Assembly: GCF_033153115.1 (NCBI RefSeq)
Contig: NW_026889805.1
Span: 9,610,001-9,674,000 of the forward strand
Direction of reading: 5' to 3'
From: Saccostrea echinata
Taxonomy: Eukaryota
Length of the DNA: 64,000 bases
A model generated the notes under the pieces. It was not told where the DNA came from and did not search any database. It saw only the letters and a list, made by a program, of their open reading frames with translations. Position 1 is the stretch's first letter, and the number at the start of each line of letters is the position of its first letter. Made by a program: the position numbers and the translations under genes. This document shows positions 48,745 through 50,333 of the stretch, one piece after another.

Positions 48745-48790
48745 TCCATCACTGAAGAGACATAATTTGTCGAAATGCACATCCGGTGGA
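48745..48790 (+). ncRNA. Minimal type I hammerhead ribozyme motif (copy 1)
   Basis: CUGAAGA (48752-58), stem II GACA/UGUC, GAAA (48772-75), stem III AUG-CA-CAU, cleavage triplet AUC (C48783). Stem I UCCAUCA/CGGUGGA has one A-C mismatch next to the core. Confidence 0.75.
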
Positions 48791-48867
48791 TCAAAATTGG
48801 TAAAGTATGAGATTTACATTATGACCCCTGTGTCGACGCCTCTGCTGGTGGACTGTTAGTCCCAAAG

Positions 48868-49800
48868 CGCAGTACAGTTAAGGTGCGCATTGGAAATATC
48901 GACAATTTTTTGTGATTAAAAATGTATTCATAATCTGGATAACGATTATTTTTAGTACATTATATTTATATCGGACAAATGTAATTATGGTTAATAACTA
49001 CATATGGAGGATGATCAGATTTTATATTTAGACTTGTCACGTGATGCAGCAGTCATGTGATTTTAGCACATTTACTTGCAGTATTGAGCAAGTCCTATAT
49101 AGATTCTGCTATTTCATTGTTAAAATCATATTTGTATGACCAATGCTGTATTTTTTGCTGGTCAACAGCATTAAATATAGATATAATTATTATTTTCAAG
49201 ATTTCATCAGGATCGCAGCACTTTTCAGATACCTTAATACTTCTAAAGTTGATTTGTAAAAGCTTACTATGATCGATCCATTGAGTGTATGCCCTTGCAC
49301 TAGATCGATTTATTAAGACCTTTATATTACCCTCCAATATACTTGCGTACAAATATACGGCAGTATCAATTAAATAGGAAATGTACAGAAAATATAGTAA
49401 TAAAGTCTTAAAGAAGACATTGAATCCAAGTTAATGGCCTAAGAAATATCTGTAAGTAATATTTTATTTAGCTATAGAATACATTTTTCGTTGAGAAAAT
49501 ATTACTTGATCCGCCTCTCACTGCCTACAAACTGCGTCAAGTTTTACGAAATGACGTCACATTGACAAGTGCGTTGCGATCAGTTACTTGTTTATACCTT
49601 GTTATTTGGGATTTAACTAATGACAAAACAGAATGTTGTAGTAAATTTTGATGTAGTTTGATGGTATCTTGCAGTTTAAAATAGCAAATCATTTCATTTT
49701 GAGGTATTTTTTAGAATTGTTGGTTTTGTATGATGTCATAGTTAATTTTTCCCGTGCAAATTAGGCTCCGCCCCCTTTTTGTAGCCTTAACTGTGCTGTG
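48868..49800. mobile_element. Non-autonomous TIR transposon with 2-bp TSD (CACTA/EnSpm-like by termini and TSD)
   Basis: TIRs CGCAGTACAGTTAAGG / CCTTAACTGTGCTGTG (14/16). AG is duplicated at 48866-67 and 49801-02. Confidence 0.75.
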
Positions 49801-50042
49801 AGGGTCTTTACAGCCCAGTAGCTAAGTACTTTGGTACAAGCTTGAAAATCTGGATATATAGTTAATTGCTGTGGTAAAATTTAGAAATATATTTCAAAAT
49901 TAAGGATTATGTCCCTCATACATAGCTCTGATCCTTCGACGTATTTGGCTCCAGTCTTTGACACCTCCCTTTTTACAGCTCTTCAAAGTTTAAAAAAAAA
50001 ATTAAAAAAAAAAAAGTTCGGATTTCCAATGTTTTGGCATGA

Positions 50043-50086
50043 GCATCACTGAAGAGACATAACTTGTCGAAATGTGCATCTGATGC
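50043..50086 (+). ncRNA. Minimal type I hammerhead ribozyme motif (copy 2, intact core)
   Basis: Perfect stem I GCAUCA/UGAUGC, CUGAAGA (50049-55), stem II GACA/UGUC, GAAA (50069-72), stem III AUG-UG-CAU, and predicted cleavage after C50080 (AUC). Confidence 0.85.
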
Positions 50087-50333
50087 ATCAAAATTGGTAC
50101 CATCTGACCTACATTCTCTGCTTGATTGACTAGGTACATGCAAGACTACACTCAAGTCTGTTCAAAACGTATCATAATTATGTGATTTCCAAATCATAAT
50201 TCACATCTGATGCATTTATGGATGCTTTGTTCTATTCTTGCTGGAAATCATGAAATTGGAGCATTTTCATATTGTTATTATGATTATGCATGTATTTAGC
50301 ATATTTATTTTGACAATCTTGACTCTTTTACAG

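What the first reader, a model, noticed from the sequence alone, without database searches (positions are those of the whole stretch)
48745..50103. Intronic retrozyme-like unit bounded by two hammerhead ribozymes, on the sense strand of the host pre-mRNA
Seen: two copies of CUGAAGA-stem II-GAAA-short stem III-AUC bound a 362-bp monomer once the nested transposon is removed. Copy 2 has a perfect stem I and lies only ~250 nt upstream of the Ig-exon acceptor (50333). Known: minimal type I hammerheads occur in Penelope-like elements and in small non-LTR retrozymes of invertebrates, which yield circular RNAs. Inference: host transcription would read through both ribozymes. Self-cleavage could cut the intron co-transcriptionally, affect splicing or termination of the IgSF gene, and release a ~1.3-kb RNA carrying DNA-transposon cargo.
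Basis: partly seen in the sequence, partly recalled or inferred. Interest (0 to 1): 0.8.

Follow-up and report, generated by a model that had tools for sequence, protein, structure and literature searches.

The report
Old intronic hammerhead retrozyme copy
This is an old copy of a very common hammerhead-ribozyme-carrying mobile repeat, sitting in an intron of an immunoglobulin-type gene and later split by a second transposon; it is an ordinary member of a known class, with no sign that it affects the gene.

Summary
Two type I hammerhead motifs lie on the + strand at 48746-48789 and 50043-50086. Both keep every catalytic-core base. Both give full-length matches to Rfam Hammerhead_1 at 29.1 and 30.3 bits, below the curated 34.

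They bound one unit of a dispersed family of repeats 338-363 bp long:
- The genome holds 1330 matching hammerheads; the reversed-pattern control gives 0.
- Copies have variable 5' starts, and nearly all share a fixed 3' end about 35 nt past the cleavage site.
- They form short tandems, carry no RT or endonuclease ORF, and have 36-40% GC.

This is the non-LTR, Penelope-type retrozyme architecture described by Cervera & de la Pena (2020). A ~0.93-kb MITE-like repeat splits the window copy. The copy is intronic and in the sense orientation: a V-set Ig exon follows 253 nt downstream, and contigs show it spliced.

The functional inference is not supported:
- All family RNA contigs carry letters of other copies.
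- The only locus-specific contig crosses the second cleavage site uncut.
- No other genomic copy carries the retrozyme-MITE junctions.

The mutual complementarity of the two helix III octamers is what CpG decay of a palindrome produces. The scan also noted hammerhead retrozyme-like units on other pieces of this genome (s1-810234, s1-817804).

The parts
48734..48863 (+). Left part of the retrozyme copy (family monomer positions 1-129), including hammerhead copy 1. The 5' boundary is uncertain by about 25 nt.
   Evidence: BLAST and pairwise alignment to natural family monomers.
48746..48789 (+). Hammerhead copy 1, type I. Predicted cleavage after C48783. The core is intact. Helix I has an A.C mismatch at the pair next to the cleavage site and a compensatory C-G outer pair. 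The helix III octamer is AUGCACAU.
   Evidence: (RF00163, 29.1 bits, model 1-45 of 45).
48868..49798 (.). Nested MITE-like repeat with 14-nt terminal inverted repeats (13 of 14 complementary). The inserted block is about 48864-49799. It has no ORF above 85 aa. The target-site duplication is not resolved.
   Evidence: I4; 40 scored places (39 besides the window's own), 79-94% identical piece by piece, 2809 first-look candidates; 9 joints in family contigs skip it; ends; ORFs.
49800..49991 (+). Body of the retrozyme monomer (family positions 131-323), followed by an A-rich low-complexity tract up to about 50021.
50031..50115 (+). Terminal repeat of the retrozyme (family positions 1-86) with hammerhead copy 2. 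The element's 3' end is ...TACATT at 50115, 35 nt past the cleavage site.
50043..50086 (+). Hammerhead copy 2, type I. Predicted cleavage after C50080. The core is intact and helix I is a perfect 6 bp. The helix III octamer is AUGUGCAU.
   Evidence: (RF00163, 30.3 bits, model 1-45 of 45).
50334..50669 (+). Ig V-set exon of the host gene, with acceptor AG at 50332-50333 and donor GT at 50670-50671.
   Evidence: Pfam V-set, E 1.1e-11, 45.4 bits against a cut-off of 26; contigs stop at 50332 and 50674 and continue elsewhere; splice signals.

Best explanation
The stretch 48734-50115 is one old insertion of a high-copy, non-coding, non-LTR (Penelope-type) retrozyme family. It consists of one monomer of about 356 bp plus the 86-bp terminal repeat, so a type I hammerhead sits at each end.

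Shown here: the family spreads as a retroelement. Copies have variable 5' starts, nearly all share a fixed 3' end about 35 nt downstream of the hammerhead cleavage site, and they form short head-to-tail tandems.

Inferred: multimeric transcripts are cut by paired hammerheads that share an 8-bp palindromic helix III. The unit RNAs are circularised by a host ligase and copied by the reverse transcriptase of a Penelope-like element.

This copy landed in the sense orientation in an intron of an IgSF gene, 253 nt upstream of a V-set exon. It was later split by a 0.93-kb MITE-like repeat and has since decayed:
- The two terminal repeats are 87% identical.
- The CpG at the centre of the helix III palindrome is lost in both hammerheads.
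- Copy 1 has an A.C mismatch at the base of helix I.

Most likely it is now a passive intronic passenger. Any residual self-cleavage would only nick an intron that is removed anyway.
For: Hammerhead identity. Both copies keep all core bases and the three helices in type I topology. Both give full-length RF00163 alignments at 29.1 and 30.3 bits. An intact family member scores 32.1.

Family size. There are 1330 matches to the 32-nt hammerhead within 2 mismatches, 686 forward and 644 reverse; the reversed-pattern control gives 0/0. All 150 scored matches of model R1 reach 82.6 bits or more, and 137 tie at the top score of 85.1.

Architecture.
- In L002-L030, 29 of 29 copies end at monomer position 84-91 and start anywhere from position 1 to 311. 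Ten of the 29 carry two or three full hammerhead repeats; eight measured monomers are 338-363 nt.
- In L061-L090, 28 of 30 end at position 80-90.

Non-autonomy. None of the 8 longest neighbouring ORFs is an RT or GIY-YIG protein. L091 holds two separate insertions with no ORF between them.

Composition. GC is 36-40%.

Dimeric mode. A natural palindromic copy cofolds into a double hammerhead at -32.5 kcal/mol, against -20.8 for two monomers. As single units, helix III does not form.

Host context. A V-set exon lies on the + strand. Contigs stop at its edges, which shows splicing.

Age. The copy carries a nested MITE that other copies lack. It is 86-87% identical to a natural monomer.

Literature.
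- Mussel retrozymes of 350-390 bp with about 5000 type I hammerheads (PMC7229834, sections 13, 14 and 17 read).
- Metazoan type I hammerheads have a 6-bp helix I, a 4-bp helix II and a short palindromic helix III, and act as dimers (PMC4209133, passages).
- Retrozymes as derivatives of Penelope-like elements (10.64898/2026.07.22.740005, abstract and Results part 1).
Against: - Neither copy, nor an intact family member, reaches Rfam's gathering score of 34.
- Covariation within this near-identical family is weak. Only 2 pairs change on both sides, and 29 of 500 shuffles reach the covariation score.
- Single hammerheads fold no better than shuffles, with z of -0.12 to -0.28.
- Eight natural monomers folded as circles give z of -1.46 to +0.95. 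The 'highly self-paired' trait of published retrozyme circles is therefore not seen.
- No target-site duplication was evident.
- No autonomous partner was found. Of 30 GIY-YIG loci, 29 have no family hammerhead. The one match (L049, 60.6 bits) is a family insertion on the strand opposite to the GIY-YIG match.
- Circular RNA is not shown. The head-to-tail joints in contigs fit tandem DNA copies equally well, and the runs' RNA label is a guess.
- Neutrality for the host gene is inferred, not measured.
Confidence: 0.85

Rival explanations
1. Host transcription reads through both hammerheads. They self-cleave, singly or as a cis heterodimer through their complementary helix III octamers. This cuts the intron co-transcriptionally, lowers or modulates IgSF mRNA output, and releases a 1297-nt RNA (48784-50080) that carries the MITE.
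For: - The sense orientation and intronic position are confirmed.
- Both catalytic cores are intact.
- Copy 2 has a perfect helix I.
- The two octamers are perfectly complementary, and cofolding predicts an 8-bp intermolecular helix III.
- There is a precedent for an intronic ribozyme influencing its host mRNA: the Cpeb3 ribozyme (PMC10919898; I saw only the search listing and the start of the abstract).
Against: - The exon is spliced normally in three runs.
- The only locus-specific contig (X4, 50033-50268, 2 mismatches) crosses the cleavage site uncut.
- All family contigs carry other copies' letters at 48784, 48789 and 50063.
- Copy 1 has an A.C mismatch next to the cleavage site.
- The heterodimer gains only -3.5 kcal/mol, against -11.7 for an intact family pair, and the two motifs are 1.3 kb apart rather than about 356 nt.
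- The octamer complementarity is the expected by-product of CpG decay of the GCGC palindrome. Among the first 100 listed perfect hammerheads, 83 have GCGC, 10 GTGC and 7 GCAC. In alignment A1 the counts are 21, 14 and 3 of 44.
- No second genomic copy has either retrozyme-MITE junction.
- Intronic retrozymes are common in Xenopus (about 42-44% of copies) although depleted relative to intergenic DNA (10.64898/2026.07.22.740005, Results part 1).
Confidence: 0.08
2. It is a fragment of an autonomous Penelope-like element, namely its pseudo-LTR with hammerhead, rather than a member of a separate non-autonomous retrozyme family.
For: - The partial-tandem structure, 5' truncation, fixed 3' end near the hammerhead and dimer-type hammerhead are all features of Penelope-like elements (PMC8557442, PMC11167929 and PMC4209133, passages).
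- The genome holds at least 1175 GIY-YIG candidates.
- An unchecked note of this scan (s1-810234) reports a hammerhead monomer inside a Penelope-like RT copy elsewhere in this genome.
Against: - Repeats follow each other directly at about 340-360 bp with no ORF between them.
- None of the 8 longest neighbouring ORFs is an RT or endonuclease.
- Of the 30 best GIY-YIG loci, 29 have no family hammerhead, and the one match (L049) is an insertion on the opposite strand.
- Bivalve Penelope-like elements are reported to be mostly Naiads that lack canonical hammerheads (PMC8557442, passage). That this genome is a bivalve is my guess, not shown by any search.
Confidence: 0.05
3. The two motifs are chance matches to a loose hammerhead descriptor.
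For: The Rfam scores lie below the curated threshold. Folding z-scores are near zero.
Against: - The descriptor gives 2 matches against 0.09 expected.
- The same 51-nt motif is conserved across the 44 aligned copies (mean column identity 95%), with the core intact in 37 of 44.
- The motif occurs 1330 times in the genome against 0 for the control.
- The architecture is that of canonical metazoan type I hammerheads (PMC4209133, passage).
Confidence: 0.01

Closest known systems
Non-LTR retrozymes of invertebrates, especially those of the mussel Mytilus galloprovincialis (Cervera & de la Pena 2020, PMC7229834)
   Same: Type I hammerhead in each repeat; a repeat unit of 338-363 bp here against 350-390 bp; thousands of copies; short tandems; low GC; no LTR and no coding capacity; hammerheads without obvious loop 1-loop 2 contacts.
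   Different: Sequence identity to the published mussel families could not be checked, because their sequences are in supplements that were closed. Circular RNA is not shown here. The monomers are not predicted to be unusually self-paired. This copy is interrupted by a MITE and is decayed.
Hammerheads of Penelope-like element pseudo-LTRs, and canonical metazoan type I hammerheads that act as dimers (Cervera & de la Pena 2014, PMC4209133)
   Same: A 6-bp helix I, a 4-bp helix II with the G10.1-C11.1 pair, a short palindromic helix III that needs a partner copy, and location near the element's 3' end.
   Different: There is no RT/GIY-YIG ORF between the repeats. The hammerhead is of the canonical type, not the extreme min-HHR type.
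The 'tail' and internal RT initiation of Penelope-like elements (Frangieh et al. 2024, PMC11167929; Craig et al. 2021, PMC8557442)
   Same: A defined 3' boundary a few tens of nucleotides from the hammerhead, variable 5' truncation, and partial tandems.
   Different: The link is by analogy only. No RT start site was measured, and no partner element was identified in this genome.
Intronic self-cleaving ribozymes of vertebrates: the CPEB3 HDV-like ribozyme (PMC10919898, listing and abstract start only) and the intronic hammerheads HH9 and HH10 (recalled from memory)
   Same: A self-cleaving motif on the sense strand of a host intron, upstream of an exon.
   Different: Those are single-copy and conserved across species. 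This one is a decayed copy of a 1330-member repeat, with no evidence of conservation or of use.
Plant LTR retrozymes (PMC4918200, search listing and abstract start only)
   Same: A non-autonomous retroelement whose unit is bounded by two hammerheads and gives circular RNA.
   Different: The plant elements have type III hammerheads inside roughly 350-bp LTRs (the size is recalled), with PBS, PPT and 4-bp TSDs as stated in PMC7229834 section 13. None of these features applies here.

Membership tests
Hammerhead ribozyme, type I (Rfam RF00163) | Conserved catalytic core: C3 U4 G5 A6 N7 G8 A9, G12 A13 A14, the A15.1-U16.1 pair, and H17 at the cleavage site. | tested here: met
   Both copies read CUGAAGA ... 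GAAA ... U-C|. They align over the full Rfam model, positions 1-45 of 45.
Hammerhead ribozyme, type I (Rfam RF00163) | Three helices around the core, with helix I open (type I topology). | tested here: met
   Helix I is 6 bp (copy 1 has one A.C and one G.U), and helix II is 4 bp with the G10.1-C11.1 pair. Helix III is only 3 bp around a 2-nt loop, so it is viable only as a dimer.
Hammerhead ribozyme, type I (Rfam RF00163) | A score at or above Rfam's curated gathering threshold of 34 bits. | tested here: not met
   29.1 bits (copy 1), 30.3 bits (copy 2) and 32.1 bits for an intact family member. There is no hit at gathering level. This is an operational cut-off, not a structural feature.
Hammerhead ribozyme, type I (Rfam RF00163) | Helices supported by compensatory changes. 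| tested here: inconclusive
   On 32 distinct rows, 93.2% of cells pair. Only 2 pairs change on both sides, and 29 of 500 shuffles reach the covariation score. The family is too uniform for this test.
Hammerhead ribozyme, type I (Rfam RF00163) | Mg2+-dependent self-cleavage at the predicted site. | not testable with these tools
   This needs in vitro transcription. The one locus-specific contig is uncut at 50080/50081, but a single contig says nothing about rates.
Metazoan non-LTR retrozyme (as defined in PMC7229834, section 13) | A type I hammerhead within short repeats of 150-450 bp, in multiple tandem copies dispersed through the genome. | tested here: met
   Units are 338-363 bp. Ten of 29 sampled loci carry 2-3 hammerhead repeats. 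The genome holds 1330 hammerheads. The window copy has one unit plus the terminal repeat.
Metazoan non-LTR retrozyme (as defined in PMC7229834, section 13) | No LTR and no coding capacity (non-autonomous). | tested here: met
   Repeats abut directly. None of the 8 longest neighbouring ORFs is an RT or endonuclease. L091 has no ORF between its two insertions. PBS and PPT motifs were not searched for.
Metazoan non-LTR retrozyme (as defined in PMC7229834, section 13) | GC content below 50%. | tested here: met
   Eight natural monomers have 36-40% GC.
Metazoan non-LTR retrozyme (as defined in PMC7229834, section 13) | Target-site duplications, when present, longer than 4 bp. | tested here: inconclusive
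   The best flanking direct repeats are 3-11 nt at inconsistent offsets in 30 loci. The window copy shows only 4 nt.
Metazoan non-LTR retrozyme (as defined in PMC7229834, section 13) | Expressed as unit-length linear and circular RNA. | tested here: inconclusive
   Family contigs are deep (summed depth up to about 417 at one position) in runs that also hold spliced mRNA contigs. Head-to-tail joints 50101 or 50103 -> 48811 or 48813 are seen in X1 and X2. Contigs cannot tell circles from tandem copies, and the runs' RNA label is a guess.
Metazoan non-LTR retrozyme (as defined in PMC7229834, section 13) | The circular RNA is predicted to be stable and highly self-paired. | tested here: not met
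   Circular MFE z-scores are -1.46 to +0.95 against dinucleotide shuffles, with 55-65% of bases paired. The linear fold gives z +0.65. The source paper itself notes that mussel circles differ in predicted structure (section 17).
Autonomous Penelope-like element | A single ORF with RT and GIY-YIG endonuclease between the pseudo-LTRs. | tested here: not met
   Of 30 GIY-YIG loci, 29 hold no family hammerhead, and the one match (L049) is an opposite-strand insertion.

The most novel reading that the evidence does not exclude
The family's anatomy may be the genomic footprint of rolling-circle reverse transcription of hammerhead-made RNA circles. That anatomy is a fixed 3' end 35 nt past the cleavage site in 57 of 59 sampled loci, variable 5' ends, and direct head-to-tail units. 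The copying enzyme would be a Penelope-like RT that starts at an internal site, the property shown in vitro for an Anolis element.

On that reading, this sense-strand intronic copy could still be excised from the pre-mRNA as a 1297-nt RNA carrying a whole MITE. Its two decayed hammerheads can only pair perfectly with each other. If so, a DNA transposon would get an RNA-circle route to new copies, and the host gene a ribozyme-dependent brake.
Probability: 0.04. Interest if true: 0.7.

Novelty: new member of a known kind. Interest (0 to 1): 0.2.

Why it matters
It matters little for the host gene. It is one decayed copy among more than a thousand, and the gene is spliced normally.

The family as a whole is more useful:
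- At least 137 hammerheads tie at the model's top score, and 83 of the first 100 listed are identical over 32 nt, which suggests recent activity.
- It has a sharply defined 3' end next to the ribozyme.
- It lives in a genome rich in GIY-YIG elements.

That makes it a convenient invertebrate case for testing whether retrozymes are copied by Penelope-like reverse transcriptases from an internal start site.

The case also shows that Rfam's gathering threshold and default filters miss a whole family of canonical metazoan hammerheads. Finally, it shows that complementary helix III octamers can arise simply from CpG decay of a palindrome.

Tried and rejected
1. Rfam at gathering level on the whole window and at E<=10 on 1651 nt gave no hammerhead. 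Only scans of 65-71 nt did. A whole-genome RF00163 search found nothing at E<=0.01, and its controls also rang nowhere, so it is uninformative.

2. Autonomous partner. I searched for GIY-YIG (PF01541) in the genome. I scanned the 30 fetched loci with a strict hammerhead filter and monomer BLAST, then with model R1 with filters off. The only hit was a family insertion in L049, on the strand opposite to the GIY-YIG match. The rest were 9 weak matches of 9.6-12.5 bits. A pair of hammerheads 2.4 kb apart (L091) proved to be two separate insertions. The partner was not found, but only 30 of at least 1175 candidates were examined.

3. Covariation and thermodynamic z-scores gave no support beyond chance. 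I do not use them as evidence for the fold.

4. The search for target-site duplications found no consistent repeat.

5. For the MITE I could not settle the exact ends or a TSD.

6. RNA evidence. Only four small-share runs kept as contigs were available, with kind 'RNA?' as a guess. Starts, ends, strand and circles therefore cannot be read.

7. I considered and rejected a snoRNA reading of 50075-50143. snoR117 scores 26.4 bits against a gathering score of 42. I attribute the match to short C/D-box-like strings in the retrozyme tail.

8. The organism's name was not sought. The tools code or withhold names. My guess of a bivalve rests only on the resemblance to mussel retrozymes and on the abundance of GIY-YIG elements.

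9. Supplements were closed. Supplementary Figures S4-S6 of PMC7229834 (mussel hammerhead families and circle sequences) could show whether this family is one already published.

10. Papers recalled but not seen: Forster 1988 (double hammerhead; cited inside a PMC4209133 passage); de la Pena & Garcia-Robles 2010 on intronic hammerheads; Dye et al. 2006 and Fong et al. 2009 on ribozyme-cut introns and splicing.
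Full report
**What is there**

The + strand carries two near-identical 61-nt stretches, 48742-48802 and 50039-50099. They are 87% identical and 1297 nt apart. Each holds a complete type I hammerhead:
- helix I of 6 bp, open at the ends
- the core CUGAAGA
- helix II, GACA/UGUC, with a 5-nt loop
- GAAA
- a 6-nt helix III segment
- U-C at the cleavage site

A generic descriptor finds exactly these two sites in 64 kb. Shuffles give a mean of 0.09, and 2 of 100 shuffles reach two or more.

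Rfam gave nothing at gathering level on the window and nothing at E<=10 on 1651 nt. Scans of 65-66 nt gave full-length Hammerhead_1 (RF00163) alignments:
- 30.3 bits, E 1.9e-06 for that small search, for copy 2
- 29.1 bits, E 4.6e-06, for copy 1

The curated threshold is 34 bits. An intact family member with the palindromic helix III also falls short, at 32.1 bits. The whole family therefore sits just under Rfam's bar.

**The family**

- An 81-nt query around copy 2 gave 1363 first-look candidates in the window's own 923-Mb genome. All 40 scored matches were 92-100% identical.
- A 32-nt hammerhead pattern with up to 2 mismatches occurs 686 times forward and 644 times reverse. The reversed-pattern control gives 0 and 0.
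- Model R1, built from 44 aligned hammerheads, gave 150 scored matches, all at 82.6 bits or more. Of these, 137 tie at the top score of 85.1 bits. I read this as a sign of recent activity.
- The catalytic core is intact in 37 of the 44 aligned copies, including both window copies.

**Architecture**

I used a natural 359-bp monomer from L007, which has three hammerheads in tandem, as the yardstick.
- All 29 other loci of the first sample end at monomer position 84-91, in ...TTTACATT(A). That is about 35 nt after the cleavage site.
- They start anywhere between position 1 and 311.
- Ten of the 29 carry two or three full hammerhead repeats; eight measured natural monomers are 338-363 nt.
- In the second sample, L061-L090, 28 of 30 end at position 80-90. 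The two exceptions are L075 and L088. At least two loci duplicate the first sample (L083 = L003, L085 = L009).

A variable 5' end, a fixed 3' end and head-to-tail units are the marks of target-primed reverse transcription with 5' truncation.

No RT or endonuclease lies beside these loci. None of the 8 longest neighbouring ORFs has such a domain. Two hammerheads 2.4 kb apart turned out to be separate insertions. Monomers have 36-40% GC.

These features match the published definition of metazoan non-LTR retrozymes, and in size the mussel ones (350-390 bp, about 5000 hammerheads; PMC7229834, sections 13, 14 and 17 read).

The hammerhead itself has a 6-bp helix I, a 4-bp helix II and a short palindromic helix III. 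That is the 'canonical metazoan type I' form, which is said to work as a dimer in tandem repeats (PMC4209133, passages). Folding agrees:
- Alone, helix III does not form.
- Two natural palindromic copies cofold into a double hammerhead with an 8-bp helix III, at -32.5 kcal/mol against -20.8 for two monomers.

**The window copy**

| Window coordinates | Family monomer position |
|---|---|
| 48734-48863 | 1-129 |
| 49800-49991 | 131-323 |
| 50031-50115 | 1-86 |

The copy is one unit plus the terminal repeat, like L005, L006, L010 and L020.

A different repeat fills the gap:
- It has 14-nt terminal inverted repeats.
- 40 scored places (39 besides the window's own) are 79-94% identical piece by piece, from 2809 first-look candidates.
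- The other copies carry about 105 bp that the window copy lacks.
- It has no ORF above 85 aa.

Nine joints in family contigs jump from 48857-48866 to 49799-49816, and two further joints land further right at 49855 and 49897. This confirms that other copies lack the insertion.

**Decay**

- The copy is 86-87% identical to the natural monomer.
- Copy 1 has an A.C mismatch at the helix I pair next to the cleavage site. The family has A-U there. Copy 1 also has a compensatory C-G at the outer pair, where the family has G-C.
- Both copies have lost the CpG at the centre of the helix III palindrome AUGCGCAU. Copy 1 now reads AUGCACAU and copy 2 reads AUGUGCAU.

These two octamers are exact reverse complements of each other, a point raised in a sibling note (s1-803453). 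That follows automatically. They are the two products of CpG deamination of a palindrome, one on each strand. Both forms are common in the family:
- 83 GCGC, 10 GTGC and 7 GCAC among the first 100 listed perfect hammerheads
- 21, 14 and 3 of 44 in alignment A1, a sample biased toward copy 2

Energetically the heterodimer gains only -3.5 kcal/mol. An intact pair gains -11.7.

**Host gene**

- Translating 50336-50671 on the + strand gives an Ig V-set domain (E 1.1e-11, 45.4 bits against a cut-off of 26).
- An AG lies at 50332-50333 and a GTAAG at 50670.
- Contigs from three runs end at the acceptor edge 50332 (X2, 434 nt, no mismatch; X3, 366 nt) or at 50674, 5 nt past the donor (X1, 2002 nt). 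All three carry further sequence that does not lie on 48000-51500.

The second cleavage site is 253 nt from the acceptor.

**Does this copy act?**

Nothing says so.
- Retrozyme-family contigs are deep, with summed depth up to about 417 at position 50063. All of them carry T at 48784 and C at 48789, and at 50063 nearly all carry T where the window has C (all in X2 and X3; summed depth 116.3 of 134 in X1, 29.5 of 33.8 in X4). So nearly all come from other copies.
- No run covers 48000-48701.
- The only locus-specific piece is a 236-nt contig in X4, at 50033-50268 with 2 mismatches. It runs uncut across 50080/50081 into the unique intron.
- Head-to-tail joints (50101 or 50103 -> 48811 or 48813, in X1 and X2) fit multimeric or circular family RNA. 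They fit tandem DNA copies equally well.
- The runs' RNA label is a guess, and contigs cannot show ends.

To test the 'transposon cargo' idea I searched the genome with 85-nt probes across both retrozyme-MITE junctions. Apart from the window itself, none of the 39 scored matches per probe spans a junction. There were 566 and 709 first-look candidates. The composite has therefore left no retro-copies.

**Negative and weak results**

- Covariation is uninformative in this uniform family.
- Single hammerheads fold no better than shuffles.
- Monomers folded as circles are not unusually stable, with z from -1.46 to +0.95 for eight natural monomers. One published retrozyme trait is therefore not seen.
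- No target-site duplication was found.
- No autonomous partner turned up among the 30 GIY-YIG loci examined, out of at least 1175 candidates.

Craig et al. report that bivalve genomes are dominated by Naiad elements, which lack canonical hammerheads (PMC8557442, passage). If this genome is a bivalve, which is my guess, that would explain the miss.

**Mechanism**

Shown: the sequence features, the family structure, the intronic sense position and the normal splicing.

Inferred from the literature:
- Transcription of tandem units, followed by dimeric hammerhead cleavage.
- Ligase-mediated circularisation (PMC7229834, section 17).
- Copying by an RT of a Penelope-like element. The fixed 3' end near the ribozyme recalls the 30-40-bp 'tail' and the internal RT start of those elements (PMC11167929 and PMC8557442, passages). 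The 2026 preprint argues that retrozymes derive from Penelope pseudo-LTRs (10.64898/2026.07.22.740005, abstract and Results part 1).

That preprint also reports that about 42-44% of Xenopus retrozyme copies overlap introns. An intronic copy is therefore not unusual in itself.

**Verdict**

- The identification as a retrozyme-like unit is supported.
- The proposed effect on the host gene and the 1.3-kb cargo RNA are unsupported.
- It is a new member of a known kind, of low interest as a locus. The family is of modest interest for its sharply fixed 3' end and its recent activity.
- Two other first-reader notes report hammerhead retrozyme-like units elsewhere in this genome (s1-810234, s1-817804). 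I did not check them.

Noticed in passing
family-wide; L002-L030 and L061-L090: 57 of 59 sampled family copies end at the same point, about 35 nt downstream of the hammerhead cleavage site (...TTTACATT), while their 5' ends vary. This resembles the internal RT start and 'tail' of Penelope-like elements. It would suit copying from a circular template.
   Followed up: partly
genome-wide: At least 137 hammerheads tie at the top score of the 51-position model, and 83 of the first 100 listed are identical over 32 nt. The retrozyme family appears to have been active recently, unlike the decayed window copy.
   Followed up: partly
window 48868-49798: A MITE-like repeat of about 0.93 kb, with 2809 first-look candidates in the genome. 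The other copies carry about 105 bp between query positions 239 and 244 that the window copy lacks. Its TSD and superfamily are not resolved.
   Followed up: partly
window 50856-51309: Another multi-copy repeat lies in the intron downstream of the Ig exon. In all four runs it is covered only by contigs carrying other letters, several per contig.
   Followed up: no
window 50075-50143: A sub-threshold match to the plant C/D-box snoRNA family snoR117 (26.4 bits against a gathering score of 42). I attribute it to short C/D-box-like strings in the retrozyme tail of copy 2, and take it for chance.
   Followed up: partly
genome-wide, e.g. G000:C30:16246120 (-) and 16249633 (+): There are at least 1175 GIY-YIG candidates. 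Many sit in head-to-head pairs about 0.3-5 kb apart, the inverted arrangement described for Penelope-like elements. None of the 30 loci examined carries this hammerhead family in cis.
   Followed up: partly
L024:226-960 (+) and L069:1909-2814 (+): Two ORFs lie next to unrelated retrozyme copies. One has a DZIP3-like HEPN domain (E 1.1e-26). The other has a weak Transposase_21 match (28.3 bits against a cut-off of 28.6).
   Followed up: no
window 48600-50250: The same hammerheads were invisible to cmscan on 1651 nt at E<=10, but scored 29-30 bits when only 65 nt were given. The speed filters, not the model, hid them.
   Followed up: yes
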